Below the pieces are notes generated by a model that saw only the letters and a list, made by a program, of their open reading frames with translations, made no database searches and was not told the origin of the DNA. Below are positions 28,817-53,531 of a stretch of 64,000 nucleotides of DNA, one piece after another (within the stretch, counting starts at the first letter, position 1; every line of letters begins with the position of its first letter). Made by a program: the position numbers and the translations under genes. Location: the sequence record NC_061442.1; one strand, given 5' to 3'.

Positions 28817-29121
28817 TGAAAGGGAAGAAGCTAAACGTATTCTTGCAGCAACGAACGGCAGTAAACAAAGTTGCGTCCAGTCCACAAGACTGGGAGACGT
28901 ACAAAGAAATGCTGCTGAACATACGGCTTGCCGTAGCGGTCGACCCGCGCCCTGATGCTGCTATTCGCCATTTGGCTCGTACTTGGTATGCTGAATCAAA
29001 GTACGCGCTCCCTGTTTGTCAGGCTACGCTTTTAAAACTCATGACGTTGAAGAAAGCAAACCAGACACTCGAAGAAATGATTGCTCTTTATATTGACCTA
29101 GAGGAAGGAACTGAGAAATGA
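28816..29121 (+). CDS. Hypothetical protein
   Basis: TGATG overlap. Confidence 0.7.
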   Translation: MKGKKLNVFLQQRTAVNKVASSPQDWETYKEMLLNIRLAVAVDPRPDAAIRHLARTWYAESKYALPVCQATLLKLMTLKKANQTLEEMIALYIDLEEGTEK

Positions 29122-30332
29122 CCGAAGCTGAACTGAACAACGACTACATCGTTAACGCAGCAAAAACTATCTTCACCGCAGGGACAGTGCAACAACGTGA
29201 CGCCTTGCGAACTATCGCTAATACTGTCCTTTCAGGCAAAGCTGCTTTCGCTTACGAAGACTGTTCGTTGGATATTGAAACAACGTATCGTCTGTTAGAA
29301 GAAATCCAGTTTACTGGTGATGGCCGTCGAATGTTGCCTGCCGATGAAATTGTCGCGCTTGATAACATCTTGCGCAAGAACTGGCGCAAAGACTTCTTCA
29401 CCGCAGTATCGAACATGGCTCTGACTATGTACAGTACAGACCCACGTACTGCTGGACGCGGCTTCTGGCCGACGAGTCATAGCGAGTGTGCGCTGCTTGT
29501 GCATCGTGCGTTCTTGTGGGTTGTCGCCCAGAACGGTCTTACTAATCTGCTGCGTGAGAACTATATGGGTGTGAGTCATACTCGCCTGCCTCAGTTTATC
29601 GTAGCGTTTCAAGTCGCAGGTAAAGACGAAGGTGTTGCGCGTCATTACACTCTGTATAATGCGCAGGAAGATTGCGGGACCATCACTACGAACAATCTTC
29701 TGCCTGAGGACTACAAAGAGAAACTGGCGGCAGAGCTTTTAGCGAATCGTCCTGCTGAGTATGATGCCGTAGAGCACATGGATTTTGACGAACTGATCGA
29801 ACTGTGCGAACGTCTGAACGTTATCGGACCAAACTCGACCAAGCGCCAGGCCACTTGCGATTGTAGCATTGACGATGATTGTGAGTGTGACGAAGAAGAC
29901 GAGCCTATGACCCGCGACGACTTCGATAAAGATGAAGTCGGTGACCTGCGCGATCACTTCTGGCAGAAGTACGGTTACCCAGACGACGAGCCTGAAATCC
30001 CAGACGAAGATGTGTGGATTCCCGGTGTGTCTCAAATGGAAGTCCGTATCGATCTTCCTGTAGTAACTCTGTCTGACCCAGACAAACAGATTGTCCCACG
30101 TGCTGGCATGAAGATGAAGTCCCGCGCGAAAAAGCCTATGGGCAAAAGTGAGCCTGTTGTGCTGTCTTACGCCCAACAAATCTGGCATGAGCTGGATAGC
30201 AAGAAAGAGTTTGGTGATCGTAGTTTCGCAATCACTCTCGTTTCTCGCCATACGTGCGGAGTTAGTCGCGCAGTCGCTACGACCCGTGAAGCGCTGGCAA
30301 TCGCTACTGCACTGATGGATGTAAGCAAATAA
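29118..30332 (+). CDS. Hypothetical protein with helical module and acidic tract
   Basis: EHMDFDELIELCERL followed by a D/E-rich segment. Confidence 0.8.
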   Translation: MTEAELNNDYIVNAAKTIFTAGTVQQRDALRTIANTVLSGKAAFAYEDCSLDIETTYRLLEEIQFTGDGRRMLPADEIVALDNILRKNWRKDFFTAVSNMALTMYSTDPRTAGRGFWPTSHSECALLVHRAFLWVVAQNGLTNLLRENYMGVSHTRLPQFIVAFQVAGKDEGVARHYTLYNAQEDCGTITTNNLLPEDYKEKLAAELLANRPAEYDAVEHMDFDELIELCERLNVIGPNSTKRQATCDCSIDDDCECDEEDEPMTRDDFDKDEVGDLRDHFWQKYGYPDDEPEIPDEDVWIPGVSQMEVRIDLPVVTLSDPDKQIVPRAGMKMKSRAKKPMGKSEPVVLSYAQQIWHELDSKKEFGDRSFAITLVSRHTCGVSRAVATTREALAIATALMDVSK

Positions 30333-30400
30333 CTGGTCAGAATAGCGCTTCTTCGTGAGGCGCTTCTATGATATAATCATAGATAGAGCAACAATGCTCT
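30320..30400 (+). promoter_or_regulatory. Class-A phage promoter
   Basis: gtaagcaaataactGGtcagaat; TGaTATAAT at 30369; agagca-acaa-tgctct hairpin. Confidence 0.85.
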
Positions 30401-30445
30401 CAACGTTCTATTCAACCATACGTTTAAACACGGGATTGTCATAAA

Positions 30446-30748
30446 ATGTCACGTACTATTTCACGCAAGAAAGCTCTCGAATTAATGTCTAAAACTTACA
30501 ACGCAAAGCATCCTGAATATCTGCCTCGCCTGATGGCAGAAGATATGGATTCTTCCAGCTTGTTTGAATTTCGTGAAGATGTTGTTGCCCAGATTCGTGA
30601 AGGCAAAGATCCCGTTGCTGTTGTTGATGCTATGATCGACAACGCTATTCGTGTGACTCTGGTTCGTCGTCGTTCTAGCAACGATTACAATCCAAAGATC
30701 GCCGATGTACTTACTGATGAAATTCGTGATCTGCTCCGTAACCTATAA
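30446..30748 (+). CDS. Hypothetical protein
   Basis: ORF track. Confidence 0.75.
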   Translation: MSRTISRKKALELMSKTYNAKHPEYLPRLMAEDMDSSSLFEFREDVVAQIREGKDPVAVVDAMIDNAIRVTLVRRRSSNDYNPKIADVLTDEIRDLLRNL

Positions 30749-30756
30749 GGAATAAA

Positions 30757-31308
30757 ATGAAAAGCTACGGTTACTTTTATATGTTGAATCACATTGCGAT
30801 GGCCGTAGACGCACCCAGCAAGGACGCTGGGTTTAAAGCTATGGTTGAGTTGGACATGTTCAACCGTGCGTCTATCTTCACCCGCCCTGACGCTGAGCCT
30901 CGTGCTGCTCAACTCGTCAAAGACTTGACTGCTTCAATCTATCCTGTCGGCGACTGTCACCCGACTATCGAACAGCGCATGATGCTTGTTCGCGCTCTGC
31001 ATGATCAAGAGCTGGAAAAGATTGTAGGCTCGATTCGTTTCTTCGTGCCGTTCGCATACACGAAAGAAGAACTGTGCGACACGTTCGGCTTCTTCGACAA
31101 CGGAGACACGTTGAGCATTCCGTATTTCTTGCGTCATCATTTCATGGACGACCAAGCTGTCTTCTGTGAAGGTAAGCTAACCAGCTTCGCTTACTCCTGC
31201 ACTCATGGAGAAGTGTCGCAGACGGCTCGCCAGTACGGTTTGTTCCCTGCATACGCTTATGGTAAGAACGATATACCTGAGCAATTCAAACATCTGCCTC
31301 TGTTCTAG
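30757..31308 (+). CDS. Hypothetical protein
   Basis: AAGGA RBS. Confidence 0.75.
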   Translation: MKSYGYFYMLNHIAMAVDAPSKDAGFKAMVELDMFNRASIFTRPDAEPRAAQLVKDLTASIYPVGDCHPTIEQRMMLVRALHDQELEKIVGSIRFFVPFAYTKEELCDTFGFFDNGDTLSIPYFLRHHFMDDQAVFCEGKLTSFAYSCTHGEVSQTARQYGLFPAYAYGKNDIPEQFKHLPLF

Positions 31309-31317
31309 GAGCTTCTC

Positions 31318-31779
31318 ATGGGAGTAGTTAAAGGCATAACCGCTACCACGTTCCCTTCGAGGGGACGTGACGAGGGCCAGAAGATTGCTCTCAAAACTCG
31401 CTGGGGAATTTTCCCTGCGTCTGTTGTTCGTCAGGACAACGATCATCCGTACAACGAGATATGGAAGATTGACGGTAAGAACTTACCGCGTCGCTACTTC
31501 TCGGAAGACGCAGACCTGTTCGTGTCCAGACAGTTCATCGAGAACTTCCCGAAGCGCTCTCTAGTCTGCGCTAAAGGTGAAAGTGAAAACCAATTCGTTG
31601 ACGTTGTGTTTGACCACGACACGCAGAATACCTGCGAAGGCGTTATCGTGACGCATCGTGATCTGTTAATCGTCATCTTGATTACGACGGGCCCTCATGC
31701 AGGCCGATACGTTACAGGAAAAGAATGCCAGTACGCACCTAAGCCGCGTAAGGTTAAGGAGCTGATCGATGAAAGTTGA
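31318..31779 (+). CDS. Hypothetical protein, apparent internal domain duplication
   Basis: Two FP(S/K)R...(V/I)V...(R)RY(F/V) units. Confidence 0.7.
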   Translation: MGVVKGITATTFPSRGRDEGQKIALKTRWGIFPASVVRQDNDHPYNEIWKIDGKNLPRRYFSEDADLFVSRQFIENFPKRSLVCAKGESENQFVDVVFDHDTQNTCEGVIVTHRDLLIVILITTGPHAGRYVTGKECQYAPKPRKVKELIDES

Positions 31780-32050
31780 TAAAGGTAATTTCCTTGAGCG
31801 TTTGAGGTCAGGCGAAACCTTTTACATGCACGTTAGCGGCAAGAAGAAAGGTCAACCTCGTCAAGGTGTTTCGTTGGGTCATGATGCTCGATACAAAGAC
31901 CTGATGATGGCCGTAGGTGGAGTTGCATTCACTCACGGGTATAAGAACGTTCATGTATCATTTAGCCGCAACATTATGGCAGATGCTGATGGTGTTGTGG
32001 TGTTTCGTGTTAAACAATCAATCACTGTTAAAGAAGAAAGGACGTACTAA
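31769..32050 (+). CDS. Hypothetical protein
   Basis: AAGGAG RBS. Confidence 0.75.
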   Translation: MKVDKGNFLERLRSGETFYMHVSGKKKGQPRQGVSLGHDARYKDLMMAVGGVAFTHGYKNVHVSFSRNIMADADGVVVFRVKQSITVKEERTY

Positions 32051-32789: not shown

Positions 32790-32847
32790 TGATATCGTTC
32801 ACACAAGGAGCCTTACGTGGGCTCCTTATTATCGTAATATAAATGCT

Positions 32848-33162: not shown

Positions 33163-33200
33163 TTGGGTCCTAGCGCCTTCACACTAGGGGAAATATTCCG

Positions 33201-33881: not shown

Positions 33882-33895
33882 TAGAGGATATAATA

Positions 33896-36360: not shown

Positions 36361-36362
36361 TC

Positions 36363-37517: not shown

Positions 37518-39164
37518 ATGTCATTCGATCTTCGTCAAAACTTACTGCTTGTCCGTGACGCTACTCTGACAGGCAAACCGCTGTTCTATTTCTACAACGC
37601 TATGGGTCGTGAGATGGTACTCACAGGTGACGTGCTACGTGAGATTCTTGAGCGTCAGAAAGAAGGTACGCTCTGCACCAACACTTACTGGGGTTTTGCT
37701 ACTGACCCAACACTGGAAGTTTGGTCGTTCGATGATAACAATGACCTAATGCTTCACCATCGCGTAGGCAAGTCCTGCACCACATTCCTGCCTTACGAAA
37801 TGATTGCAAATGCCCATGACGGATTCAAGCCAATCAACGGCATGTTCATTGAAGACAGCCTGCGCCGTATCATTGCTATTCACCTAAAGGCGACTTGCCG
37901 TGAAGAACAAAAGATTACGTGGTTCGCTGACCTACCTGAGCCTGAGATGCGTAGCATGTTGCTTTCGTTTGGTCTGGGCCCTCTGCGGGTATCGCGTGAA
38001 GACAAAGAAGGTCTGATCAAACTGCATGACCAGTGGCTGGACGACTTCGACGACAAATACAAATATACGCACAACGCAATCGGCCTCGACGCTGACGAGA
38101 AGATTCCTGCTGACTATCGCCCTGAACGTATTCGTGACATTATGAAGCGTATGATGCACAACACCAAGACGCAGAAGATCATGGTTCAGACTCTGAATGA
38201 CCTGTTACGTCAGTGTAGTATCAGGGGCGATATCCCAATGCCTGGCGCCAACTTTAATCTCCAACAGTTGACCTGCTATTACGCAACACACTTAATCTTT
38301 GCGCACGATGCTGATGCGAAGCTACGCAGCCTGATAGATAATCCTCAGTTTGTTGTCAACTTCATCTACGGTTGGTACCCGGACTATTCTTGGATTATGG
38401 TCAATGAGGAAACGTTCGACTATCAACAATCACTGGTACGCGCCGCGCTGATCTCGTTAAAGCGTCATGTGGAGAATGAAATCGGTACGTACAAAATCGT
38501 TCACGGCATGGTTAAGTTCGCAGACGGTTTTGACCCTCATGTACCTGAGAAGGTAGAAATCGAAGAAGAGGACTTCGAAGAGGAAGAGGACCTCGAAGAG
38601 GAAGAGGAAGAAACTGACGATCAAGAGAAAGAAGTCATCGACTACCTGCGTACCAAAAGCGAAGATGAATTACGCAAAGTTGCGACAAGAAAGAAAATGG
38701 CGCGTCCTAATAAGTTGAAGTCTATGGACAAAGAAGAATTGATTGAGCTGTGTGCTGACTACTACGGCACTGAGATGCCTGAAGACTTCGACGAAGAGGA
38801 AGAGGAAGAAGAAAAAGAACAGGAGCGTGTGCGCATCGCCCGCAAGTTCCCCGTAGTGTTGCGTTATGATCGCATAGATTATGACTATGTTCATCGTGCA
38901 TTAGTTAAAATGGGCATACTTAAAAAGAACAAGACCCGCAAGCAGATGGACAAATCGCAGAAGCTGACCGTTGCTCAACAACACGCCGCACTGCTTGTCA
39001 CACTCAAAGAAGCTGTCTTGGACTCAGGTCAGGACGTTCTGTCTAAATTGGACGAAATAACGTTGTACCAGCTGGCCGCCTGCATGACGAAATTGAAAGA
39101 AGGTGATAGCTATCCTCGTGACGCTGCGTACCTGAAAGAACTAATTAAACACGCGGTCAAGTAA
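37518..39164 (+). CDS. Hypothetical protein with acidic tracts and shared helical module
   Basis: GGAG RBS; SEDELRKVATRKKMARPNKLKSMDKEELIELC between E-tracts. Confidence 0.85.
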   Translation: MSFDLRQNLLLVRDATLTGKPLFYFYNAMGREMVLTGDVLREILERQKEGTLCTNTYWGFATDPTLEVWSFDDNNDLMLHHRVGKSCTTFLPYEMIANAHDGFKPINGMFIEDSLRRIIAIHLKATCREEQKITWFADLPEPEMRSMLLSFGLGPLRVSREDKEGLIKLHDQWLDDFDDKYKYTHNAIGLDADEKIPADYRPERIRDIMKRMMHNTKTQKIMVQTLNDLLRQCSIRGDIPMPGANFNLQQLTCYYATHLIFAHDADAKLRSLIDNPQFVVNFIYGWYPDYSWIMVNEETFDYQQSLVRAALISLKRHVENEIGTYKIVHGMVKFADGFDPHVPEKVEIEEEDFEEEEDLEEEEEETDDQEKEVIDYLRTKSEDELRKVATRKKMARPNKLKSMDKEELIELCADYYGTEMPEDFDEEEEEEEKEQERVRIARKFPVVLRYDRIDYDYVHRALVKMGILKKNKTRKQMDKSQKLTVAQQHAALLVTLKEAVLDSGQDVLSKLDEITLYQLAACMTKLKEGDSYPRDAAYLKELIKHAVK

Positions 39165-41499: not shown

Positions 41500-41859
41500 A
41501 TGAAGTTCAACGAAGTATCCAAAGAGGCGCAAGTCGCCCTAATGTCAAGTGCCTTGGCTGGCGTAATCGAAGCGTTCACGCGTGAAGATGGAGACGAAGG
41601 TCGCAAGATTCTAGTCTTAGCACTCAAGCAAGTCGGTCTGACTGTAGACGAGTTCGGCGCTCTTATCTCTGACTTGTCTCCAGAAGTTGAGCTTGAAATT
41701 GTCAGTGTTATGGAAGCTGCCGATGCAGAGCCGGACGAAGATGACGACGACGAAGAACCTGCTGACGACGACTCTGATACAGACGCAGACGGCTGGCAGA
41801 ACCTGCATGAAGATCGCGTGTGTCTTGTATGCAACCATGAAAGCTGCATCTGTCACTAA
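41500..41859 (+). CDS. Acidic hypothetical protein
   Basis: AGGAGG RBS; C-terminal CxxC..C.CH. Confidence 0.8.
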   Translation: MKFNEVSKEAQVALMSSALAGVIEAFTREDGDEGRKILVLALKQVGLTVDEFGALISDLSPEVELEIVSVMEAADAEPDEDDDDEEPADDDSDTDADGWQNLHEDRVCLVCNHESCICH

Positions 41860-42117: not shown

Positions 42118-42825
42118 ATGCCTACTACTTCATGTCCTAAGACAGAAGACAAGTTCTCCCGTGCTCGCGCTGCTAAGAACTCTCCTGAGCGTCAGGCCGC
42201 GGCCATCAAGAAAACGCCACGAGGACCTTCCTCGGTTCGCCCTAAATCGACGGCAGATCGTGAGCCTAAGATTCGTGACGAGGAGCGTGTGTACAATCTC
42301 GTACATGCAATTCTGAGCGCGTGGAAAGCTGATGTGGGACATGCTGAAAACACGGCAGCATCTGCTGGTATCATCAAAGTGTCACGTCGTAATATTGAAG
42401 GTGCCCTGCGTGACCTCAAGAATACGCGCTTCACTAAAATCCCGACGCTCATTAACGATATCTTGACAGGCTCCGATATCTGCGCTGAGTTTGGTCGTTG
42501 GGTATACGTCGAGCACGATAGCCCTGATTGGATTTTCGTGCGTCTGCCTGAAAACAGCACACCTGTGATTCGTGCTGATGTAAGCGTAGGTAAAACGGAC
42601 GAAACGGCAACGTCCGTGACGACCTCTAGCGAAGTGCTTCTGGAAGCGTTCGAGGCCAGTGACGACGAAATTGAGATACTCGAATGTAACGATCAGGATA
42701 TTGAAGACCTCGAATCTGCTGGGATGCGCAAGCGTCTGATAGATGCGAAAATCATCAAACCGGAAGCTGCCTCGAAGCTGTCACGCAATGACTTAATGAA
42801 GCTCTGCGCGTACTACAGCGCATAA
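42118..42825 (+). CDS. Hypothetical protein: basic N-terminus, shared helical module at C-terminus
   Basis: AAGGA RBS; DIEDLESAGMRKRLIDAKIIKPEAASKLSRNDLMKLC. Confidence 0.8.
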   Translation: MPTTSCPKTEDKFSRARAAKNSPERQAAAIKKTPRGPSSVRPKSTADREPKIRDEERVYNLVHAILSAWKADVGHAENTAASAGIIKVSRRNIEGALRDLKNTRFTKIPTLINDILTGSDICAEFGRWVYVEHDSPDWIFVRLPENSTPVIRADVSVGKTDETATSVTTSSEVLLEAFEASDDEIEILECNDQDIEDLESAGMRKRLIDAKIIKPEAASKLSRNDLMKLCAYYSA

Positions 42826-42984: not shown

Positions 42985-44604
42985 ATGGCACGTATCGAAA
43001 CTAACACTAACCTGGTTGGCAAAACTATCGTCCTGCTGAACGGCACCAAAGCTAAAATCGAAGATGCAATCGCGTCTGGTTACAAAGTGAAAGGCCAGAC
43101 CAAGCGTATCGCCACTCGCTGCGTTATCAAAGAAGGCGCTCACTTTAAAGAAATCGAGCGCATGAACATGAGCCAGCTGGAAGATACAGGCGAAGGTTAC
43201 GTGAAGCTGAAAGATGCGAAAGCTGCGAAAGCGTCAACCAAGAAACCTTCTGCGAAAGAGAAGGCGCCAAAAGCAGGCAAGAAAGCCGCCCAGCCAGCGA
43301 AAGAAAAAGAACCTAAGGTTCGTCGCAAATCTTCTAAAGAGAAAGAAGACGAATATCAGGACTTGGCTCACGCTATCATCAAAGGTGGTAAACGTGCGGC
43401 GCCTGTTGAAATCGCTGAGATCGACGGCGACCTGACTGACTGCGTTGCTCAACGTCTGGTAGACGTGCTGAATAATAGCGAAGTTGCGAAGCTGTGCGCT
43501 GATAACAAAACGCCGATCGCAAACGCAATTGAAGTGACGTACGGCGCTGAGTTCGCCCCTGAGACCAACGTCATGCAGATCACGCTGAGTCTGCAATACG
43601 CTAAGCCTGTTCAAACGCTGTCACGTCCGACGCTGGAAAACGCAGAAGCTATCGCGTTACGTGCTGAGAAAATGGCGGCGCCTAAGCTGTCGATGAAACT
43701 CAAGAAAGCGATTCGTGAAGCATTCAGCCTCGAAGACGCGAATGACCTTGAGCTTGGAACTGTGTTGCTGTCTGACGGCGCTGAATTTGTTTACTTCGGC
43801 GAATCTGCGAAGCATGTCGGCAAAGCGCTGCTGTATGTTGTAGAGACCGACAAGTTCAAATCTGTGCTGGGCTCTACGCTGGGTGAGTACGAAATCCCAG
43901 ACGCAGAGGAAGAAGAGGAAGAGGAGGAAGAAGTTGAAGACGAATCCGAAGAGGAGGAAGAAGAAGACGGCGAAGAAGAAGACGGCGAAGAAGAAGACGG
44001 CGAAGAAGAAGACGGCGAAGAAGAAGACGGCGAAGAAGAAGACGGCGAAGAAGATTCTGCCGAATACGACTACGTTGCCGTGAACAAAGATCAGCTCGAT
44101 ATGGTCAACAAGAAAGTGACCGCTAAGTATCACGCTGCGCTGGCCGAACGTTTCAACACGACCGAAGAAGTTCTGATTCCGGGTCTGGTACTAACAGACG
44201 GCGAAACAACCTTCGCTTACCTGGGTTGCGATAGCAAAGGCGGTCTGCTGGTAATCGACTGTGGTGATGACGGCGAAGGCGAAGACGTGCTGATGTATAG
44301 CAAGTCTGATATCAAGTCTCTGGATGACTTCAATCCTGTGATGGGCGAAGCTGACGAAGACGGCGAAGAATCAGACGGCGGCGAAGAATCAGACGATGAA
44401 GATCTGGACGAAGAAGACGGCGAAGAAGAAGAAGAAGACGGCGAAGATGACGACTTCGACTTTGACGATGTGCCAGAAGCTGATATCGAAGATCTGACCG
44501 AAGACGAACTGCGTGACCGCGTAGTCGAAGCCGGCCTGACCACTCCGCGTAAAGCTGAGAACATGAATGAAGCTAAACTGCGCAAGCTGCTGAAAAGCGC
44601 ATAA
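42985..44604 (+). CDS. Highly acidic low-complexity protein (539 aa), paralog of 44687 gene
   Basis: GAGGAG RBS; D/E tracts; duplicated G(T/L)VL.DG..F.Y.G domain; C-terminal helical module. Confidence 0.9.
   Translation: MARIETNTNLVGKTIVLLNGTKAKIEDAIASGYKVKGQTKRIATRCVIKEGAHFKEIERMNMSQLEDTGEGYVKLKDAKAAKASTKKPSAKEKAPKAGKKAAQPAKEKEPKVRRKSSKEKEDEYQDLAHAIIKGGKRAAPVEIAEIDGDLTDCVAQRLVDVLNNSEVAKLCADNKTPIANAIEVTYGAEFAPETNVMQITLSLQYAKPVQTLSRPTLENAEAIALRAEKMAAPKLSMKLKKAIREAFSLEDANDLELGTVLLSDGAEFVYFGESAKHVGKALLYVVETDKFKSVLGSTLGEYEIPDAEEEEEEEEEVEDESEEEEEEDGEEEDGEEEDGEEEDGEEEDGEEEDGEEDSAEYDYVAVNKDQLDMVNKKVTAKYHAALAERFNTTEEVLIPGLVLTDGETTFAYLGCDSKGGLLVIDCGDDGEGEDVLMYSKSDIKSLDDFNPVMGEADEDGEESDGGEESDDEDLDEEDGEEEEEDGEDDDFDFDDVPEADIEDLTEDELRDRVVEAGLTTPRKAENMNEAKLRKLLKSA
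43957..44046 (+). repeat. Perfect tandem repeat (GAAGAAGAAGACGGC)x6 encoding (EEEDG)6
   Basis: Six identical 15-nt units. Confidence 0.95.
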
Positions 44605-44686: not shown

Positions 44687-45946
44687 ATGTCAAACGCAAA
44701 CAAAATTCTGCTTAACGCTCGTGTACGCCGTTTAGATGGGACCATTACTTACATCAACAAAGTGAACGCTAACGGCTATAGCACCGATGCGAAAGGCCCG
44801 CAGATTCCTGTGAAACGCATTGTGCTTGCAGGCAAAACGCTCAAAGAGATTGAAGCGCCGTTCGAGAGAGGCGAGTATATCATTGTACAGGGCATTGCAG
44901 TGAAACTGAACAAGCGCCAGCAACGTGAACTTGCAGACAAGACGCTGGATGAGAAAGCGCTGCGTCCTGACTTCGGGCGTCTGGCGTTCATTGACCGCGA
45001 CGACGGCAAAGCAACTGACGGTAAGAAAGTGAAGCCGAAAGCTGCGAAGAAAGAAGGCGGGTTGAAAGCGACTCGTAAGCAGAACGGCGATACACGCACA
45101 AAGAAAGAGCGTAAGGCAGAAGCTGCCGCCGCCGCTGAATCGCTCGACACAATCAAGTCAACTCCAGTTGATCGCAAGGGCGAACTGATAGCGACCATCG
45201 ACGCGACCATTGAAGACGCGACAAGCAAAGAGCGCCGTAAGTTGTTGTCTGAATCGTTCGACATGGACTGGAAAGACATTAAGAAGCACGGCGGTAAGGG
45301 TGTCGTTAAACATCTGGGCCGTAAAGCTGCGCAATCTGCCGTAAGCAAAATGCGCGCGACTGTTACGCAGGACGCATTCATTAAGCAGATGCCTGCTGAG
45401 TTGAAGCGCTTGATTCAAGATCGTCGGCTCGTACTGAACAAGCGCCAGATTGAAGCTGTGCTCTCTGCGCTTGGGCTTGATGTGAAGTTCTATAACATCG
45501 CCATGCAGACGTTGCTTGGCAATCTGTCGCTGGCTGTAGACGACACGCTGGCTGACGACAAAGCAGATAAGAAAGTGAAGAAGCTGAAAAAGCATAAAGC
45601 CTCTAAGCCGCAGTATCTGTCAGAGAAAGACCAGCAACGTCGTATGAAGAAAATGAAAGTGAAGCTGCTGGCTCCTACTGAGAAAGGCATGAAGAAAGCC
45701 AAAGCGAAATTGAAGCAGGCGAAAGTTACGCTTGCCGACAAGCTGGGCATCTCGCCGAAAGAAATCAAACGCGGTCTGATTGCATACCGTCCTAACGGCG
45801 TTGATTACATGTTTGTTGCCAGTGATGCTCGCGGCCCAATCTTCATCGACAAAGACGGTGACCCGTGCGTGTATACTTACGAGAATCTCGAATCGACATT
45901 CGACTTCCGTCTGACTCAACCTTCTGAACTGGACGCTACTGTATGA
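44687..45946 (+). CDS. Lys-rich basic protein, paralog of 42985 gene
   Basis: GAGGA RBS before ATG 44687; shares N- and C-terminal domains with the 42985 protein. Confidence 0.85.
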   Translation: MSNANKILLNARVRRLDGTITYINKVNANGYSTDAKGPQIPVKRIVLAGKTLKEIEAPFERGEYIIVQGIAVKLNKRQQRELADKTLDEKALRPDFGRLAFIDRDDGKATDGKKVKPKAAKKEGGLKATRKQNGDTRTKKERKAEAAAAAESLDTIKSTPVDRKGELIATIDATIEDATSKERRKLLSESFDMDWKDIKKHGGKGVVKHLGRKAAQSAVSKMRATVTQDAFIKQMPAELKRLIQDRRLVLNKRQIEAVLSALGLDVKFYNIAMQTLLGNLSLAVDDTLADDKADKKVKKLKKHKASKPQYLSEKDQQRRMKKMKVKLLAPTEKGMKKAKAKLKQAKVTLADKLGISPKEIKRGLIAYRPNGVDYMFVASDARGPIFIDKDGDPCVYTYENLESTFDFRLTQPSELDATV

Positions 45947-48054: not shown

Positions 48055-48078
48055 ACCTTTTATCTGAGGAGATAACGT

Positions 48079-51075
48079 ATGTCGGAAAATAACCTGGGCG
48101 CTGCTGCAACCTTCGGCTCTGAGACTCAAAAGCAATTAAACGACCAACAGCGTCGTGCGCATTCTGCTGAGTCCGGCCACGTAAACAAATGTACCATCGT
48201 CGTTCTTACTGCGCTTAACGCGCATGGTCGATTCTCTTACCTGACTGCTGACGAGCAACTGCGTGAGCGTTCAATCGAAGGTAAGGTGATGGACCGTCTG
48301 CCGGATCTGATTGGCCGTGCATCGGGTCCTTCTACTGATCCGAACAGCGCGTACCACATCCTGCATCCAAACAATGGCGTGCCTACTCGTATCGACGAGC
48401 GTATCAAAGTTGGCGAAGCGGATTCGGTCATCATTTCATATACTGTAAATAAAGCAGTGTCAGAGATGTATGGCAGTTTATCGCTGGCGCTGTTTAGTGC
48501 TGGTGAAAGTGATATCGCTGATTTGGCGGCTGAGTATGGTATTCACTCCATCTCAATCGTCGAAGAGGCGAAAGCGCCTGACTATATCAAAGCTCTTACT
48601 GAACAGGTAGAAGCTCTGAATATTGTAAATCTCACTAGCATTGATGAAGCTGACGGTGCTTTTGAGAAACCAGTAATCAACTACAGCGCCCTGCCGGGTA
48701 ATCCAATCAACGTACTGTCCGGCGCTGTGCGTACTTTCATTATGCAAACTCTAAACGGCGAAGTATTCGCTGCGATTCCAAATAACGGAGAACTGAACGT
48801 GAAACAACCTACTAACGCAACGCCGGTCAATCTGGACGAAGACTTCGATTCAGAAGACGAAGTGGTTGATCAGCAGGGCGGCGAAAGCGACGACGAAGAA
48901 GTGACAGGCACTGACCTGTTCGGCTATAAAGCTGAAACACTGACCGTCGCGCAAATGACAGAAGCTCTTGAAGCTCTGTCCTACGATGTTAGCGCGATGG
49001 ACGAAGCGGGCATCCGTGAGTCGTTCGAAACTGAACAGCAAATCTGGATGGAAGGTAACGACGCTGCCGAAGAAGACGGCGAAGAAGAAGATGCCGAAGA
49101 CGAAGAAGAATCTGATGATGAAGATTCCGAATTCGATCCTTCTCTGTATCTGGGCCACCTGCTGTCTGCTGACCAGCTGGACCGTTCTGCACTGAAAGTT
49201 CTGGTGCGTACTCAAGACCTCAAAGTCATGAAGTCCGACACCGAAGAAACGCTGACTGCGAAACTGCTCGAACTGGTCGAAGGTGCAACCGAGCAGGAAA
49301 TGGCTGAACTGATTGACACCTTCGTAGGCGCGCTGCAAGAGCGTGAGATCGATTGTCCTAACCTGCTGGCCGCGCTGTCGTCTGACGAAGACGAAGAAGA
49401 AGACGCGGAAGAGTCAGAAGAAGAAGATGAAGAAGAATCTGAGGATGAAGAATCCGAAGATGAAGATGATTCTGATTCTGTGCAAGACCAGATCGATGCC
49501 GTTACTGACCCGCTCGACTACTTCCAGTTCGCTGGTGGTTCGCTGACTGCTGAACAGCGTGTTGCTGCTGTCGAAGCGATGGGCGAAGACGTTACCGGCT
49601 TGAACATCGTGCAGGTAATGAAAGCGTTCTCTCGCATTCAGGGTCAGACTAACGAAATCGACGTTGACGCAGAAGAAAGCGAAAGCAACGTTGCTGAACT
49701 CGAAGCGCTGCTGGGCCAGTACGACGATGCTACCGTGCAGCACGTCGCAGAAAGCCTGGGCGTTAACGTTGACGAATGCGAAACCGCAGAAGACATGATC
49801 GAAGCGATTGTCAATGGCGGTACCGAAGACCAGTTCGCTGCGGTTGAAGAAATCGCAACCAGCTACGGTGTTGACCTGTCAGAAGTTGCTGACGGCGAAG
49901 ACCTGGACTTTGTTGACGCGGTTCTGTCTGTGCTGCCGTCCTTCCTGTCAGACGACGAGCAGGAAGAAGATGAAGAAGATGAAGAATCTGAGGAAGAAGA
50001 ATCCGAAGACGGCGAAGAAGAAGATGAAGACGAGCAGGACTCTGAGATCGATTCTTCTGAAAACGAAAGCCTGAAATTCATCAAGTCTGTTAACTCTGAC
50101 AACGCCGTGGGCACTCTGCTGGCAGTCGATATGGATCAGACTGTAGTTATCAACTTTACTCTGACTGACGGCGATACCTACAGCGCTGTTGAATCTGAGC
50201 TGGTCGATATCAATGGTTTCAACTACCGCTTCCCATTCAACCTGGGCAAAGCGTCTAAAGGTACTGCGCCGGGTTCAATGCTGCTGCCAGCTCAATCCCT
50301 GCTGGACATTGTTGAGCGCGTGAACACTACTCGCTTCCTTGCCGATCCGAAAACGTTCGACATTGGCGCATGGGCTGAAAGTCTGGAAGCAACGCTGGCA
50401 GAAGAAATTCCTGTCGCGCTGTATGCAGATCGTATTGAAGACGGCGTTGACCCAAGCGAAGCTGGTCTGGTTGTTGGTGACTTCCTCGACGAAGAAGAAC
50501 TGGAAGCCGCAACTGAGCTGGGTCACATCGACGCTGACGATGCCTCTGAACTGAACGGCGATCATCTGCCACTGGCAAGCCTGTATAACGCTCGCTCTCG
50601 CGTTCGCCCGGTTCGTGTAGACAGCGCTTACGTTGCACTGCACACCACAGTGATGAACGTCGCACTGCCTGGCTTCTGGAGCGAAGCACCTGTACAGCGC
50701 ATGATTCAGGCGGCAGTTAACCGTGTCATCAATCTGGCTGAATCTGTTGAGAACGTTAAAGTGTATGCTGCGTTCACCATGGAGTCTGCTGCACTGCTGA
50801 ACAACGGCCGTCTGTTTGAAGCGCTGGCAACTCTGCGTGAGTTTGAGCACGTCCAGTCTTACTCTGCTGCTGACGCTGCTAACTTCGACGATGCCGAAGA
50901 CGTGATCGAAGTAGCTGGTTCACTCGACACCCGTGACCTGCCGCTGTCTGTACTGGCTGGTGGTCTGGCTGGCGCATCGTTCGACAACGGCGGTGACCTG
51001 ACCATTCTGGTTCCGTGCTTCACACAAGAAGAAGACGCGGACGAAGAAGAAGGCGACGACGGCGACGACGAATAA
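48079..51075 (+). CDS. Very large acidic protein (998 aa) with repeated HeH/SAP-like helical units
   Basis: GAGGAG RBS; several D/E tracts; LDRSALKVLVRTQDLKVMKSDTEETLTAKLLELV. Confidence 0.9.
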   Translation: MSENNLGAAATFGSETQKQLNDQQRRAHSAESGHVNKCTIVVLTALNAHGRFSYLTADEQLRERSIEGKVMDRLPDLIGRASGPSTDPNSAYHILHPNNGVPTRIDERIKVGEADSVIISYTVNKAVSEMYGSLSLALFSAGESDIADLAAEYGIHSISIVEEAKAPDYIKALTEQVEALNIVNLTSIDEADGAFEKPVINYSALPGNPINVLSGAVRTFIMQTLNGEVFAAIPNNGELNVKQPTNATPVNLDEDFDSEDEVVDQQGGESDDEEVTGTDLFGYKAETLTVAQMTEALEALSYDVSAMDEAGIRESFETEQQIWMEGNDAAEEDGEEEDAEDEEESDDEDSEFDPSLYLGHLLSADQLDRSALKVLVRTQDLKVMKSDTEETLTAKLLELVEGATEQEMAELIDTFVGALQEREIDCPNLLAALSSDEDEEEDAEESEEEDEEESEDEESEDEDDSDSVQDQIDAVTDPLDYFQFAGGSLTAEQRVAAVEAMGEDVTGLNIVQVMKAFSRIQGQTNEIDVDAEESESNVAELEALLGQYDDATVQHVAESLGVNVDECETAEDMIEAIVNGGTEDQFAAVEEIATSYGVDLSEVADGEDLDFVDAVLSVLPSFLSDDEQEEDEEDEESEEEESEDGEEEDEDEQDSEIDSSENESLKFIKSVNSDNAVGTLLAVDMDQTVVINFTLTDGDTYSAVESELVDINGFNYRFPFNLGKASKGTAPGSMLLPAQSLLDIVERVNTTRFLADPKTFDIGAWAESLEATLAEEIPVALYADRIEDGVDPSEAGLVVGDFLDEEELEAATELGHIDADDASELNGDHLPLASLYNARSRVRPVRVDSAYVALHTTVMNVALPGFWSEAPVQRMIQAAVNRVINLAESVENVKVYAAFTMESAALLNNGRLFEALATLREFEHVQSYSAADAANFDDAEDVIEVAGSLDTRDLPLSVLAGGLAGASFDNGGDLTILVPCFTQEEDADEEEGDDGDDE

Positions 51076-51087
51076 TATCGTCTAAAC

Positions 51088-51117
51088 GAGTGGCTCGAAA
51101 GGGCCACTCACTTTCTT
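51088..51117 (+). terminator. Intrinsic terminator
   Basis: gagtggctc-gaaa-gggccactc followed by ctttctt. Confidence 0.7.
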
Positions 51118-51131
51118 GGGGATCTGTAAAC

Positions 51132-51953
51132 ATGACACAAGAAGTAGACCACGGCGCAAACATCATTAAGATGGTAAGTGACCGTGACGCTAAAATCCGT
51201 GAACTATCTGCTGACCTGACAGTGACTTCTGGAGGCAAAGCAGACGTGGAAGCGGAACTGCGTGAACTGTCTCTCGATCATCTGGCACTCAAAATCAAGA
51301 TGCGTAGCCGTGAGCGCGAACACGCCTCGGAGATTGCGCTGCGTGATGAACGCATTAAAGAAGTTGTTGGGTTCTGCAACGAACAAACAGTTGAAGTGAA
51401 GAACATCCGTGCTGAACTCGAATCTGTAAAACAAAAGAGTGAACCGGCTGCTGCACTGCCATTCGTTCTGCAATTGATAATGTCTGCTGGTGTCGCGCAC
51501 TACCATGCGATTATCGCACAATGCGCTATCGCTACTGTCAACAAAGCAACAAATAAAGTTGCCCGTGAACTGCGCGAAATTTATGATATTGATAATGTAG
51601 TGAAGCATCCTTCACTCTATCGTGTCGCTGTCCGACTGTGTACTCAGCTCGGTGTTTCGCCACCATCTCGCACCGAACTATCGGCCGAGATTAAAGAGTA
51701 TGTGGCCCAGAACATCGACCTGTACGTGAAAGACCCGCAGTACGCTACATCTGAATCCGCCTTGCGCCAGATTATCGCGGCGAAAAACAATGCCGCACAT
51801 TATGGCTCTTATGGCCGTGACGTGTGCCGAATGTTCGACTGGCTCCCTGCACTAGCTGCTGGCCTGGACGACATTGAAGATGACTACAACGATTTGGTGG
51901 AACAATCTGTCTATCAAGTCTGTCGTAATCTGATTAACGATAGCTTTTCATAA
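51132..51953 (+). CDS. Coiled-coil hypothetical protein
   Basis: ORF track; start moved to ATG 51132. Confidence 0.75.
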   Translation: MTQEVDHGANIIKMVSDRDAKIRELSADLTVTSGGKADVEAELRELSLDHLALKIKMRSREREHASEIALRDERIKEVVGFCNEQTVEVKNIRAELESVKQKSEPAAALPFVLQLIMSAGVAHYHAIIAQCAIATVNKATNKVARELREIYDIDNVVKHPSLYRVAVRLCTQLGVSPPSRTELSAEIKEYVAQNIDLYVKDPQYATSESALRQIIAAKNNAAHYGSYGRDVCRMFDWLPALAAGLDDIEDDYNDLVEQSVYQVCRNLINDSFS

Positions 51954-51996
51954 TCTGTAAAAGTTACCTGTAATCGAATCTGTAAACACTAATTGA
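51952..51996 (+). promoter_or_regulatory. Class-B motif cluster (AATCTGTAAA x2)
   Basis: aatctgtaaaagtt at 51952 and aatctgtaaacactaattgaag at 51977. Confidence 0.55.
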
Positions 51997-52046
51997 AGTT
52001 CGAACCGAGCGACAAGCTCACACTTATAAAATCCCGGAGCATTACA

Positions 52047-52601
52047 ATGGCTAAAGCAATTAAGTCCTCTAACCTGTCACCTACCCTGATCTCTCGTATT
52101 CAGAAAAAGTCTGGCTCCATCGGTACTTCTAAAGCTAAGCCTTCTGAACTGCCGCACGACATTCTGATCGAAACGGTGCAGGCTGTTGAGCTGATTGGCT
52201 TCATTACTGACCGCACCGAAAACAGCGTCACCATTCGTCACAAACGTGGTCATGGTTCTTCTGCGCAAGTTGTTTCTACCTTCGGCCCGAATCAAACTCT
52301 GTCTGTGCTGGGCGAAGCTGGCGGTCACGGTAGCGTAATCGCTCTGATCAACGCGCCGGTTCGTGAGTACAAGGGCTTCACTATCAAATACAAAGGCGCG
52401 ACCATCGTTGCTACCTCTGTTGAGACTGGCGAAGTGATTGAAGTGAACACCGCACTGCCTGGCTTCACTGTTCGCGCAACCGTGAACGAAACTGCTGCTG
52501 CTAAAAAGTACGGCACGCCTGCTCCTACCAAAGCTAAGAAGCTGGACAAAGGCGACAAAGCTGGTAAGACTGCGAAAGTGGCAAAGAAAGTAAAAAAGTA
52601 A
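52047..52601 (+). CDS. Hypothetical protein with Lys-rich termini
   Basis: GGAG RBS before ATG 52047; strong codon bias. Confidence 0.8.
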   Translation: MAKAIKSSNLSPTLISRIQKKSGSIGTSKAKPSELPHDILIETVQAVELIGFITDRTENSVTIRHKRGHGSSAQVVSTFGPNQTLSVLGEAGGHGSVIALINAPVREYKGFTIKYKGATIVATSVETGEVIEVNTALPGFTVRATVNETAAAKKYGTPAPTKAKKLDKGDKAGKTAKVAKKVKK

Positions 52602-52628
52602 GTAAGTCTGACGAAGACTTCTAACTTT

Positions 52629-52710
52629 CGAAATCTGTAAACATTAAGTATGCAGCGAGATAAAAATGTTTCGCTGCCTGTCTCTCGAAATCTGTAAATC
52701 TTAATTGAAG
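52629..52710 (+). promoter_or_regulatory. Class-B motif cluster (CGAAATCTGTAAA x2) flanking a hairpin
   Basis: Copies at 52629 and 52686; gcagcga/tcgctgc stem between them. Confidence 0.55.
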
Positions 52711-52745
52711 CAACGTCGCTTCTAATCAAACAGGAAATAAATATC

Positions 52746-53531
52746 ATGGCTAAAGCTAAAGCAACCGCAAACACCGCAGCAACCGTTCTGGCTAAAATGC
52801 TGGGCGTCGTAGTCGAAAACGCCAGCGCTGCTGACATTGCAGCAATTCTGAAAGAAGCCGGCCTGACTGTTGTTGGCGGTAAAGTTGTTAAAGCTGAAAA
52901 AGGCGGTAAAGCTGCTAAAGGCAAAAAGGCCAAAGCACCTACCGTTGCTGAAATCGTCGCTGCTGTTAAGGACGAAGAAGAACTGGACATCTCCGGCGTA
53001 AGCGAAGATGACCTGCGCGCCGCAGTTGTTAAGGCCAAGCTGTCTACCGCTAAGAAAGCGAAAGCGCTGGACGAAGATGAACTGCGCGAACTGCTGAACG
53101 ATAACCTGGGCGGCGAGTCCGAAGAGGACGAAGACGAAGAAGAAGAGGACGACGAAGACGAGGACGAAGACGACTCGGACGACGAAGATGAAGACGGCGA
53201 CGACGAAGACGAAGACGACGAAGACTCTGATGATGAAGAAGAGGACGACGAAGACGACGAAGACGGCGACGATGAAGACGAAGATGAAGACGAAGATGAA
53301 GACGAGGACGATGAAGACGAACTCGACCTCGACTCACTCGACAAGAAAGAGCTGTTAGCTCTCGTCCTGGAACACAAGCTGGCCCCGGCCAAGAAAGCTA
53401 AGAAAATGGACGAAGATGAACTGCGCGAACTCTGCGAAGAACACTTCGGTGGTGAAGACGACGAAGACGAAGATGAAGACGAAGACGACGAAGACTTCGA
53501 CGATGAAGACGAAGACGAAGACGACGAATAA
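52746..53531 (+). CDS. Highly acidic protein with two copies of the shared helical module
   Basis: AKKAKALDEDELRELL / AKKAKKMDEDELRELC separated by a ~70-residue D/E tract. Confidence 0.9.
   Translation: MAKAKATANTAATVLAKMLGVVVENASAADIAAILKEAGLTVVGGKVVKAEKGGKAAKGKKAKAPTVAEIVAAVKDEEELDISGVSEDDLRAAVVKAKLSTAKKAKALDEDELRELLNDNLGGESEEDEDEEEEDDEDEDEDDSDDEDEDGDDEDEDDEDSDDEEEDDEDDEDGDDEDEDEDEDEDEDDEDELDLDSLDKKELLALVLEHKLAPAKKAKKMDEDELRELCEEHFGGEDDEDEDEDEDDEDFDDEDEDEDDE

What the first reader, a model, noticed from the sequence alone, without database searches (positions are those of the whole stretch)
29118..53531. A shared ~45-aa helical module, always next to D/E tracts, recurs in at least four proteins
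Alignable copies: VIDYLRTKSEDELRKVATRKKMARPNKLKSMDKEELIELC (37518 ORF), DIEDLESAGMRKRLIDAKIIKPEAASKLSRNDLMKLC (42118), DIEDLTEDELRDRVVEAGLTTPRKAENMNEAKLRKLL (42985), and LDISGVSEDDLRAAVVKAKLSTAKKAKALDEDELRELL plus LDLDSLDKKELLALVLEHKLAPAKKAKKMDEDELRELC (52746). Partial copies lie in 29118 (MDFDELIELC), 9838, 16490, 48079 and 54852. The helix-loop-helix pattern resembles HeH/LEM/SAP/Rho-N folds, which bind nucleic acid or a partner protein. A reused tag on unrelated proteins suggests a localisation address recruiting them to one structure.
Basis: partly seen in the sequence, partly recalled or inferred. Interest (0 to 1): 0.75.

Follow-up and report, generated by a model that had tools for sequence, protein, structure and literature searches.

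The report
Acidic-tract helix-loop-helix module in phage proteins
A real, unannotated 39-residue two-helix mini-domain of the SAP/Rho-N/LEM kind recurs five times in four unrelated proteins of an Erwinia jumbo phage, usually beside long Asp/Glu runs, and probably docks DNA-handling proteins onto a shared target that is still unknown.

Summary
The window is the last 64 kb of Erwinia phage pEa_SNUABM_35, a 262-kb Alexandravirus that was used as a comparison phage without chimallin. The five quoted copies exist verbatim in four proteins. They survive leave-one-orthogroup-out profile tests, with E from 6.5e-6 to 1e-14. The five "partial copies" are not supported.

"Always next to D/E tracts" is too strong. 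Four of the five window copies and 44 of 64 copies overall touch a dense tract, against 2.7% of random positions. The 42118 copy and the stand-alone mini-proteins do not.

AlphaFold gives a confident model (pLDDT 89): helix, basic loop with a short helix, helix. Beyond family members, the named structural neighbours are mostly Rho-N and HeH/LEM proteins, but only at weak E-values. No Pfam model reaches its threshold.

The module, often with an acidic tract, behaves as a cassette that is gained, lost or swapped between orthologues. In uncultured phages it sits in the acidic tail of a gp32-type single-strand DNA-binding protein and in small proteins beside RecA-type genes.

Best reading: an undescribed HeH-type docking module for DNA-transaction proteins. 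The target is unknown. It is a new variant of a known kind, of moderate interest.

The parts
38643..38759 (+). Module copy in the 548-aa protein (ORF 37518-39164), aa 376-414
   Evidence: Verbatim. Leave-orthogroup-out E = 9.6e-8.
38553..38633 (+). D/E tract upstream of the 37518 module (aa 346-372, 74% D/E). A second tract lies at 38772-38819 (aa 419-434, 75% D/E).
   Evidence: Composition. GAAGAG-type tandem repeats at 38565-38611.
42697..42813 (+). Module copy at the C-terminus of the 235-aa protein (ORF 42118-42825), aa 194-232. Only a mildly acidic lead-in (42649-42696, 44% D/E).
   Evidence: Leave-orthogroup-out E = 6.5e-6. In phage AD1 the same module is a separate 50-aa ORF.
44482..44598 (+). 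Module copy at the C-terminus of the 539-aa protein (ORF 42985-44604), aa 500-538
   Evidence: Leave-orthogroup-out E = 2.4e-14. This is the C-terminal end of PHROG 33433.
44344..44481 (+). D/E tract directly before the 42985 module (aa 454-499, 67% D/E, ends DDDFDFDDVPEA). A further tract lies at 43897-44055 (aa 305-357, 81% D/E).
   Evidence: Composition. A perfect 15-nt x 6.5 tandem repeat at 43957-44054.
52986..53102 (+). Module copy a in the 261-aa hyper-acidic protein (ORF 52746-53531), aa 81-119
   Evidence: Leave-orthogroup-out E = 1e-14. 90% majority identity across 13 phages.
53115..53321 (+). D/E tract between the two 52746 modules (aa 124-192, 93% D/E)
   Evidence: Composition. GACGAA-type tandem repeats. 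Spacing between the two modules varies from 100 to 124 aa among 13 phages.
53325..53441 (+). Module copy b in the 52746 protein, aa 194-232
   Evidence: Leave-orthogroup-out E = 1.2e-12. This copy headed the AlphaFold alignment (pLDDT 88.9).
53451..53528 (+). Acidic C-terminal tail of the 52746 protein (aa 236-261, 92% D/E) ending in DEDFDDEDEDEDDE
   Evidence: The last 14 residues are identical in all 13 orthologues examined.

Best explanation
The repeat is a genuine, so far unannotated 39-residue mini-domain with a helix-extended-loop-helix (HeH) fold, the fold class of SAP, LEM, Ish1 and the N-terminus of Rho.

Its hydrophobic core positions (2, 5, 10, 14, 15, 19, 25, 28, 33, 36, 37) are almost invariably hydrophobic. 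Both helices start with acidic caps. The connecting loop is conserved and basic (T-x-K/R-K-A-K-K).

It often travels together with tandem-repeat-encoded Asp/Glu tracts as a cassette. That cassette has been inserted into, deleted from or swapped between otherwise unrelated non-structural proteins of Alexandravirus and related jumbo phages, and of other uncultured phages.

The next steps are inferred, not shown. The folded module is a docking element that holds its carrier on a shared target in the phage's DNA replication and recombination machinery. That target is more likely a common protein partner than naked DNA. The polyacidic tracts act as flexible, DNA-like, self-inhibiting linkers. This is the way the acidic tails of gp32, T7 gp2.5, bacterial SSB and HMGB1 work.
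For: Homology and restriction to five copies.

Fold: the AlphaFold2 model has pLDDT 88.9. The same helix, short helix, helix pattern appears for module 2 of P0003 in an independent model (pLDDT 84-91 at residues 361-400). BFVD neighbours are named Rho_N and HeH/LEM. Sub-threshold Pfam hits fall on SAP, Ish1, LEM and Rho_N.

Conserved core and basic loop across 64 copies.

Cassette behaviour:
- Many 42118 orthologues match only aa 1-160 and carry a different HeH-like tail instead.
- AD1 has the module as a 50-aa ORF.
- The SNUABM_33 orthologue of the 54852 protein has a 75-aa insert made of an acidic stretch plus a module, which is absent here.
- A 37518 orthologue, about 85% identical over aa 1-340, carries a 52746b-like module instead.
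- Stand-alone 38-75-aa versions exist.

D/E association: 44 of 64 copies against 2.7% background.

Functional context:
- P0003 has three modules and acidic tracts behind a core that Foldseek matches only to RB69 gp32 SSB (E = 3e-5, probability 1.0).
- Its family lies between a DnaE-type polymerase gene and RecA, Mre11 and Rad50 genes.
- The two-module protein P0018 lies directly upstream of a RecA-type gene in a cluster running from PolA to a clamp loader.
- The four-module protein P0005 follows a PD-(D/E)XK nuclease and an AAA_24 ATPase.
- The window copies lie among dUTPase, UV-endonuclease, gyrase B and topoisomerase IV genes, going by the annotation of relatives.

D/E repeats next to DNA-binding domains are known to autoinhibit and tune binding (PMC10250230). 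Rho-N/SAP HeH domains in phage and plasmid proteins are predicted dsDNA binders (PMC5512222).
Against: No binding partner or activity is shown for any copy.

No Pfam HeH-clan model reaches its gathering score. The PDB Foldseek search has no hit below E = 1, so the fold assignment rests on a predicted model matched to predicted models.

The module itself is net acidic (mean charge -4) and sits beside polyanionic tracts, which argues against simple DNA binding.

The SSB and RecA context comes from distant metagenomic phages. None of the four window proteins has a recognisable SSB core or any Pfam, NCBIfam or functional PHROG assignment.

Timing of expression and virion content are unknown for this phage group.
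Confidence: 0.5

Rival explanations
1. Localisation address in the strict sense of the first reader. The module, helped by multivalent acidic tracts and the neighbouring lysine-rich proteins, drives its carriers into one physical compartment. That compartment would be, for example, a charge-driven replication factory or condensate on phage DNA, rather than a defined one-to-one partner.
For: The same tag sits on unrelated proteins and in multiple copies per protein, up to four in P0005.

The locus mixes extreme polyanions with polycations:
- the 52746 protein is 46% D/E;
- the next gene, 53752, is a KAEKA/AKP-repeat protein with 30% K+R;
- there are K-rich tracts in the 42985, 44687 and 52047 proteins.
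Against: No compartment is known for this phage group. Alexandra served as a comparison phage in a study of chimallin-encoding phages.

Stand-alone modules without any tract exist. Condensate behaviour was not tested.
Confidence: 0.2
2. DNA mimicry for host takeover or counter-defence. The acidic tracts imitate DNA and sequester host nucleoid proteins or DNA-targeting defence enzymes. The HeH module serves as a folding or oligomerisation unit, or as the specificity element.
For: The D/E tracts are extreme and the tail ending DEDFDDEDEDEDDE is invariant.

The genes lie on the strand that carries the many small non-structural genes.

D/E-rich regions can act as DNA mimics (PMC10250230; PMC6294567 is listed, title only).
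Against: The PADLOC library was not searched and no other link to defence was found.

The module also sits in an SSB tail and next to recombinase genes. That points to the phage's own DNA transactions.

Known mimics such as Ocr and ArdA are rigid folded proteins, not disordered tracts. This last point is from my own knowledge.
Confidence: 0.15
3. No specific function. The 'module' would be a compositionally favoured amphipathic helical island that arises repeatedly inside charged low-complexity sequence, so the similarity is convergent or trivial.
For: The module is rich in D, E, K, L and A. Foldseek and Pfam matches to known domains are weak.
Against: Cross-validated E-values go down to 1e-14, while reversed-sequence controls stay at or above 0.13.

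Eleven near-invariably hydrophobic positions are kept across 64 copies.

Module positions are 90-92% majority-identical among 13 orthologues, while the length of the D/E tract between the two modules drifts.

Only 30 hits were found in 1.84 billion representative proteins, which is not what a compositional artefact would give.

Stand-alone ORFs exist.
Confidence: 0.05
4. Virion or packaging signal. The module would target its carriers into the capsid or onto a structural component.
For: Some BFVD neighbours with HeH-like elements are annotated as a head-to-tail connector or a virion structural protein (ranks 25 and 33).
Against: The genes lie in the plus-strand block alongside genes that relatives annotate as nucleotide and DNA metabolism genes.

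Contexts elsewhere are replication and recombination clusters.

I found no virion proteome for this phage group.
Confidence: 0.05

Closest known systems
SAP domain (Pfam PF02037) and the wider HeH group (LEM, HeH, Ish1, Rho_N)
   Same: About 35-45 residues, two amphipathic helices joined by an extended loop that carries conserved basic residues. It has an L-x-x-L-x-x-x-E-L-R start and a K-K-A ... L-I-x-x-L end. It is used as an add-on module at protein termini. The best sub-threshold Pfam hits are to SAP (E = 3.6e-4 and 1.2e-3), Ish1 and LEM.
   Different: It does not reach any family's gathering score. By my reading of the sequences, the loop is about five residues longer than in SAP, and the model forms a short extra helix there. 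The module is net acidic (mean charge -4). The glycine typical of SAP is present in only 22 of 64 copies. It is habitually flanked by poly-D/E.
N-terminal HeH of transcription terminator Rho (Pfam PF07498), including the many phage proteins annotated 'Rho termination factor N-terminal domain'
   Same: These are the most frequent named structural neighbours in BFVD. TM-score normalised to the query is 0.62-0.76. Foldseek probability is 0.96-0.99 for ranks 7, 11 and 12 and 0.41-0.44 for ranks 45, 46 and 49. They are small helical add-ons in phage proteins.
   Different: E-values are only 0.28-0.65 for the best three and 3.8-4.3 for the others, with sequence identity of 16-28%. No Rho-type OB/cold-shock RNA-binding domain follows. 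Only one member gives even a weak Pfam hit (E = 0.16).
Acidic C-terminal tails of single-strand DNA-binding proteins (the T4/RB69 gp32 A-domain, T7 gp2.5, E. coli SSB tip)
   Same: In P0003 and its relatives, the D/E tracts plus an HeH-type motif occupy exactly the tail behind a gp32-type core. Acid-plus-aromatic motifs (DFDFD, DEDFDD) recall SSB tips. From established knowledge of those proteins, the tails recruit replisome and recombination partners and restrain DNA binding.
   Different: Classical SSB tails are short and unstructured and lack a folded HeH unit. The four window proteins are not SSBs.
D/E repeats next to DNA-binding domains in eukaryotic proteins (the HMGB1 acidic tail)
   Same: Long consecutive Asp/Glu runs are tethered to a small nucleic-acid-binding-type domain. 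The proposed role is intramolecular autoinhibition and faster target search (PMC10250230).
   Different: Those are eukaryotic nuclear proteins with well-characterised basic DNA-binding domains. Here the folded unit is itself acidic and its ligand is unknown.

Membership tests
HeH fold group (SAP / LEM / HeH / Ish1 / Rho_N; a single Pfam clan, from my memory) | Two helices of about 10-12 residues joined by an extended loop within about 35-45 residues, packed by conserved leucines | tested here: met
   The AlphaFold2 model has pLDDT 88.9 with helices at 10-19, 25-30 (short) and 33-44. The pattern is reproduced in P0003 module 2. Hydrophobic positions are 89-100% conserved.
HeH fold group | Significant sequence match to one of the curated family models | tested here: not met
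   The best hits are SAP at 20.5 bits against a cut-off of 23.9, SAP at E = 1.2e-3, Ish1 at 0.019, LEM at 0.025 and Rho_N at 0.16. Whole proteins give none at E <= 1.
HeH fold group | Structural superposition on a solved or annotated HeH domain | tested here: inconclusive
   PDB: no hit below E = 1. The best TM-score is 0.68 with rmsd 1.5 A over 41 columns, to 1zbh_A, which I recall contains a SAP domain; the aligned region was not shown. BFVD: six 'Rho_N' proteins and one 'HeH/LEM' protein among the top 50, with probability up to 0.99 but E = 0.28-4.3.
HeH fold group | Binds nucleic acid (SAP, LEM-like, Rho_N) or a defined partner (LEM binds BAF) | not testable with these tools
   This needs EMSA or pull-down experiments. 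The net charge of -4 and the poly-D/E flanks make plain DNA binding doubtful.
Rho N-terminal domain (PF07498) | The HeH is followed by the OB/cold-shock RNA-binding subdomain of Rho | tested here: not met
   No such domain was found in any carrier by Pfam, NCBIfam or PHROGs. Three of the five window copies end within 29 residues of the protein's C-terminus.
SSB acidic C-terminal tail (gp32 A-domain type) | Lies C-terminal to an OB-fold ssDNA-binding core | tested here: not met
   It is met only in a distant relative: the P0003 core matches RB69 gp32 (E = 3e-5). A profile of that family finds no core anywhere in this phage genome, only the tail region of the 37518 protein.
Chimallivirus (phage-nucleus) cargo signals | The phage encodes chimallin and builds a nucleus-like compartment | not tested
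   [quoted passage not shown] I did not search this genome for chimallin myself.

The most novel reading that the evidence does not exclude
The acidic HeH-module proteins, the lysine-rich repeat protein encoded next door (53752-54279) and the K-rich tracts of the 42985, 44687 and 52047 proteins together form a phage-built, charge-driven 'chromatin' or condensate. It would organise replicating phage DNA in a jumbo phage that lacks a proteinaceous nucleus. The 39-residue module would be the address that admits client proteins, with the SSB-tail versions in other phages doing the same job. This would be a bacterial-virus analogue of SAP/LEM-based chromatin tethering.
Probability: 0.1. Interest if true: 0.8.

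Novelty: new variant of a known kind. Interest (0 to 1): 0.5.

Why it matters
All 336 genes of this phage are annotated 'hypothetical'. Nothing in Pfam, NCBIfam or the functional PHROGs touches these four proteins.

Recognising a shared, mobile HeH-type module gives a concrete handle for experiments: one 39-residue bait that should pull down the same target from four proteins. It also links these proteins, through gp32-type SSB tails and RecA-adjacent genes in other phages, to DNA replication and recombination.

More generally, the folded mini-domain plus poly-D/E arrangement was until now discussed mainly for eukaryotic nuclear proteins. This finding shows it is a recurrent, exchangeable building block in large phages.

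If the target proves to be a common hub or compartment, that would show how non-nucleus jumbo phages organise their replication machinery.

Tried and rejected
**Negative or uninformative searches**
- Pfam on the whole proteins and on the isolated modules gave nothing significant.
- A profile of the five copies against PDB sequences gave nothing.
- NCBIfam gave nothing useful.
- PHROGs returned only families of unknown function.
- tblastn of the module against the phage collection returned no match, not even the source genome. Presumably the low-complexity filter masked it.
- A homologue search with the 52746 protein found 13 relatives. None has a Pfam domain or a name other than 'hypothetical'.

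**Calls that failed for technical reasons**
- The search for related loci failed with the module alignment, with a 46-aa query and with the full 42985 protein, where the poly-E pattern swamped the scan. Shorter non-acidic queries worked.

**Ideas tested and dropped**
- The partial copies: iterated HMM and profile-profile tests against families of the 48079, 54852, 29118, 16490, 9838, 40507 and 41500 proteins were all negative, at probability 5.6% or lower.
- The alternative HeH tail found in orthologues of 42118 ('type B') was built into a profile and searched. It has no copy in this genome.
- The promoter and terminator scan of 37-55.6 kb was no better than shuffles.
- The phage-nucleus import-signal idea was dropped after reading PMC10299810.
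- Literature searches for an earlier description of SAP/HeH with acidic tracts in phages found none.
- I found no virion proteomics for this phage group.

Full report
**Where the window comes from**

The window is identical to positions 197720-261719 of Erwinia phage pEa_SNUABM_35 (MZ443788.1). This is a 261.7-kb Alexandravirus. Every CDS of the record is annotated 'hypothetical protein'.

The phage belongs to the PaBG/Lu11/AD1/Yoloswag/Alexandra group of jumbo phages (PMC7412058). [quoted passage not shown] A phage-nucleus import signal is therefore not the obvious reading.

Annotation of relatives places the region among nucleotide and DNA-metabolism genes. These include a radical-SAM protein, a DksA-type zinc finger, a UV-damage endonuclease, dUTPase, gyrase B and topoisomerase IV subunit A.

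**Check of the observation**

The five quoted peptides are present verbatim. A profile of the five copies is circular by construction, so I cross-validated it.

- Leaving out each protein in turn and using only the window copies, the held-out copies were found at E = 1.7e-9 (42985), 3e-9 and 7e-5 (52746), 8e-4 (37518) and 0.047 (42118).
- I added copies from five related phages and from a search of 1.84 billion representative proteins. The family converged at 64 distinct copies. The best hits in a reversed-sequence database stayed at E = 0.13-0.46.
- Leaving out the complete orthogroup of each protein then gave E = 6.5e-6 (42118), 9.6e-8 (37518), 2.4e-14 (42985) and 1e-14 and 1e-12 (52746), scaled to 336 proteins.
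- PHROG profiles give an independent cross-hit: 52746 aa 78-119 against the C-terminus of the 42985 family, E = 1e-6.

A six-frame scan of the whole genome finds these five copies and no others.

The claimed partial copies fail. The 29118 protein matches over 12-14 residues only (E = 0.06-0.9). Profile-profile comparison gives 5.6% probability for it and 0.2-1.6% for the 48079, 54852, 16490 and 9838 proteins.

**The D/E association**

The link with D/E tracts is strong but not absolute. Of 64 copies, 44 have at least 8 Asp/Glu in a 12-residue window within 30 residues. The figure for random positions in the window's proteins is 2.7%.

In the window the tracts are extreme: 74-75% D/E around the 37518 copy, 67% before the 42985 copy, and 93% and 92% around copy b of 52746. 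They are encoded by GAA/GAC-type tandem repeats, including a perfect 15-nt x 6.5 array.

The 42118 copy has only a 44% acidic 16-residue lead-in. Stand-alone forms have none. Four other proteins in the window have D/E tracts without the module.

**What the module looks like**

The consensus over 64 copies is D-[LIY]-[ED]-D-[LM]-[DS]-E-D-E-L-R-x-h-V-V-E-x-[KG]-L-A-T-x-K-K-A-K-K-[LM]-D-E-D-E-L-R-E-L-L-E-E.

Eleven positions are 89-100% hydrophobic. Arg/Lys at position 11 is 77% conserved, and the loop at positions 21-27 is basic. Mean net charge is -4.

AlphaFold2 with a 31-sequence alignment gives pLDDT 88.9. The model has a short turn, helix 10-19, a loop containing a short helix 25-30, and helix 33-44. 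An independent model of P0003 reproduces this pattern for its second module, at pLDDT 84-91.

Foldseek against the PDB finds nothing below E = 1. The best superposition is on 1zbh_A (TM-score 0.68, rmsd 1.5 A over 41 columns). I recall that this exonuclease carries a SAP domain, but the aligned region was not shown.

Against BFVD, after six family members, the named neighbours are mainly 'Rho termination factor N-terminal domain' proteins (ranks 7, 11, 12, 45, 46, 49) and one 'HeH/LEM domain' protein (rank 32). Foldseek probability is 0.96-0.99 for the top three of these and 0.41-0.51 for the rest. E-values are 0.28-0.65 for the top three and up to 4.3 for the others.

Scanning each member against Pfam gives only sub-threshold hits. 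Several of these fall on one fold group: SAP (3 members, best E = 1.2e-3), Ish1 (3), LEM (2) and Rho_N (1). P0025 hits SAP at E = 3.6e-4, 20.5 bits against a cut-off of 23.9.

Membership of any named family is not demonstrated.

**Cassette behaviour**

- *42118 family.* Many orthologues of the 42118 protein match only residues 1-160. Those of Yoloswag, JA11 and SNUABM_7 end instead in an acidic stretch followed by a different HeH-like motif, W-T-L-x-x-L-Q-x-F-A ... R-x-x-L-I-x-x-I. This motif gives sub-threshold Ish1 hits down to E = 3e-4. In AD1 the gene is interrupted, and the module is a separate 50-residue ORF.
- *54852 family.* The SNUABM_33 orthologue of the window's 54852 protein carries a 75-residue insert made of an acidic stretch plus a bona fide module. 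That insert is absent here.
- *37518 family.* One orthologue is about 85% identical over residues 1-340 but carries a module that resembles copy b of 52746, with much shorter acidic tracts.
- *52746 family.* Across 13 phages the modules are 90-92% majority-identical, while the spacing between the two modules drifts from 100 to 124 residues. The last 14 residues, DEDFDDEDEDEDDE, are invariant.

**Distribution**

A profile of the five copies finds only 30 proteins at E <= 1e-3 among 1.84 billion representatives, and three of those look like repeat artefacts. The true hits are:

- orthologues of the four window proteins;
- stand-alone mini-proteins of 38, 48 and 75 residues;
- small acidic proteins with one or two modules;
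- a protein with four modules (P0005);
- a protein with three modules (P0003).

None has a name or a Pfam domain in the source databases. Several PHROG families of unknown function contain the module: 30618, 33433, 2250, 1772 and 3724.

**Functional clues**

- P0018, with two modules, lies immediately upstream of a RecA-type gene in a 137-kb contig. The cluster runs from a family-A DNA polymerase to a clamp loader.
- P0005 follows a PD-(D/E)XK nuclease and an AAA_24 ATPase, downstream of a polymerase.
- P0003 and its 13 homologues lie between a DnaE-type polymerase with an HD hydrolase and RecA, Mre11 and Rad50-type genes.
- An AlphaFold2 model of P0003 has a confident N-terminal body. Its only significant PDB matches are the RB69 gp32 single-strand DNA-binding core (E = 2.8e-5 and 5.3e-5, probability 1.0). 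A weak PHROG 'single strand DNA binding protein' hit agrees (E = 0.003).
- All members of this SSB family carry, in the tail, D/E tracts flanking an HeH-like motif of a third sequence type. P0003 has three copies of the present module there.

The module therefore occupies the position of the gp32 acidic A-domain. From established knowledge of T4 gp32, that domain restrains DNA binding and recruits replication and recombination partners.

None of the four window proteins has an SSB core or any recognised domain.

**Interpretation**

Shown:
- a real, conserved, mobile mini-domain;
- an HeH-like predicted fold;
- enrichment next to D/E tracts;
- occurrence in an SSB tail and beside recombinase genes in other phages.

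Inferred:
- the module docks its carriers on a shared target of the phage DNA-transaction machinery;
- the acidic tracts act as DNA-like, self-inhibiting flexible linkers, by analogy with SSB tails and with D/E repeats next to DNA-binding domains (PMC10250230).

Rho-N/SAP HeH domains in phage and plasmid proteins are generally predicted to bind dsDNA (PMC5512222). The net negative charge of this module and of its flanks makes a protein partner, or a basic surface, at least as likely.

The rivals are set out with their tests in the rival explanations:
- a compartment or condensate address;
- DNA mimicry against host proteins;
- a packaging signal;
- a compositional artefact.

Only the artefact reading is largely excluded.

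**Verdict**

The core observation is confirmed for five copies in four proteins. The partial copies and the word 'always' are not.

This is an unannotated sequence family of a known fold class in an unusual, recurrent acidic-tract architecture, that is, a new variant of a known kind. It is moderately interesting, mainly because it offers a single testable bait that links four orphan jumbo-phage proteins.

Noticed in passing
window 53752-54279 (+): The gene right after the hyper-acidic 52746 gene encodes a 175-aa protein with 30% Lys+Arg. It has an N-terminal coiled-coil-like part, then KAEKA/AKPAK repeats encoded by 27-54-nt tandem repeats, and it ends in the acidic-aromatic tip EAEDFDFDME. 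It matches PHROG 38087 (unknown function). It resembles bacterial H1-like or AlgP-like basic repeat proteins, from my memory only.
   Followed up: partly
window 53487-53528; 44455-44478; 38781-38801; 54250-54276: Acid-plus-phenylalanine motifs recur. DEDFDDEDEDEDDE is the invariant C-terminus of the 52746 family in 13 phages. DDDFDFDD lies just before the 42985 module. EDFDEEE lies after the 37518 module. EDFDFDME is the C-terminus of the basic 53752 protein. They may be short linear motifs like SSB tips. Not tested.
   Followed up: partly
L012:13001-13714, L013:12947-13690, L014:13001-13822, L008:24146-24595: Orthologues of the 42118 protein in Yoloswag, JA11 and SNUABM_7, and the inserted gene AD1_310, end in a different HeH-like tail (W-T-L-x-x-L-Q-x-F-A ... 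R-x-x-L-I-x-x-I) that is preceded by acidic residues. It gives sub-threshold Ish1 hits (E = 3e-4). There is no copy in the window genome.
   Followed up: yes
L021:7824-8648 versus window 54852-55382: The SNUABM_33 orthologue of the 54852 protein has a 75-aa insert, an acidic stretch plus a true module, between two conserved domains. The window protein lacks it.
   Followed up: yes
window 42985-43164 and 44687-44860: The 42985 and 44687 proteins share a weakly similar N-terminal domain of about 52 aa (29% identity, pairwise E = 0.002). In both it is followed by lysine-rich tracts. They are possibly paralogues. The 42985 protein also seems to contain two copies of a beta-rich unit, each followed by a D/E tract; I judged this by eye only.
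   Followed up: partly
window 48079-51075 (+): A 998-aa protein with 24% D/E and several long D/E tracts, but no detectable module. It matches PHROG 36461 (unknown function) and is conserved in all relatives examined. The segments between its tracts look helix-loop-helix-like by eye, but profile tests are negative.
   Followed up: partly
window 57799-59457, 61064-61603, 61536-62402: The AD1 annotation calls the orthologues of both the 57799 and the 61536 genes 'DNA topoisomerase 4 subunit A'. Between them lie a 422-aa ORF and an ORF with a weak HNH-endonuclease hit (E = 0.003). The topoisomerase subunit gene is possibly split by a mobile element.
   Followed up: no
window 43957-44054: A perfect 15-nt tandem repeat of 6.5 copies (100% matches) encodes (EEEDG)n in the 42985 protein. 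This suggests recent repeat expansion.
   Followed up: no
L039:1868-3358, L040:7001-8239, L041:7001-8302: An unannotated family of gp32-type SSBs in uncultured phages of about 90-110 kb (Foldseek to RB69 gp32, E = 3e-5). Their tails carry D/E tracts, an HeH-like motif (F-D-x-M-D-R-x-x-L-K ... D-D-x-I-R-x-x-I-R-E) and a conserved basic C-terminus (K-T-L-E-E-I-K-A-E-L-R-K-K).
   Followed up: partly
window 41500-41859 (+): A 119-aa acidic protein (28% D/E) that ends in a cysteine/histidine-rich motif (C-L-V-C-N-H-E-S-C-I-C-H). It has no module.
   Followed up: no
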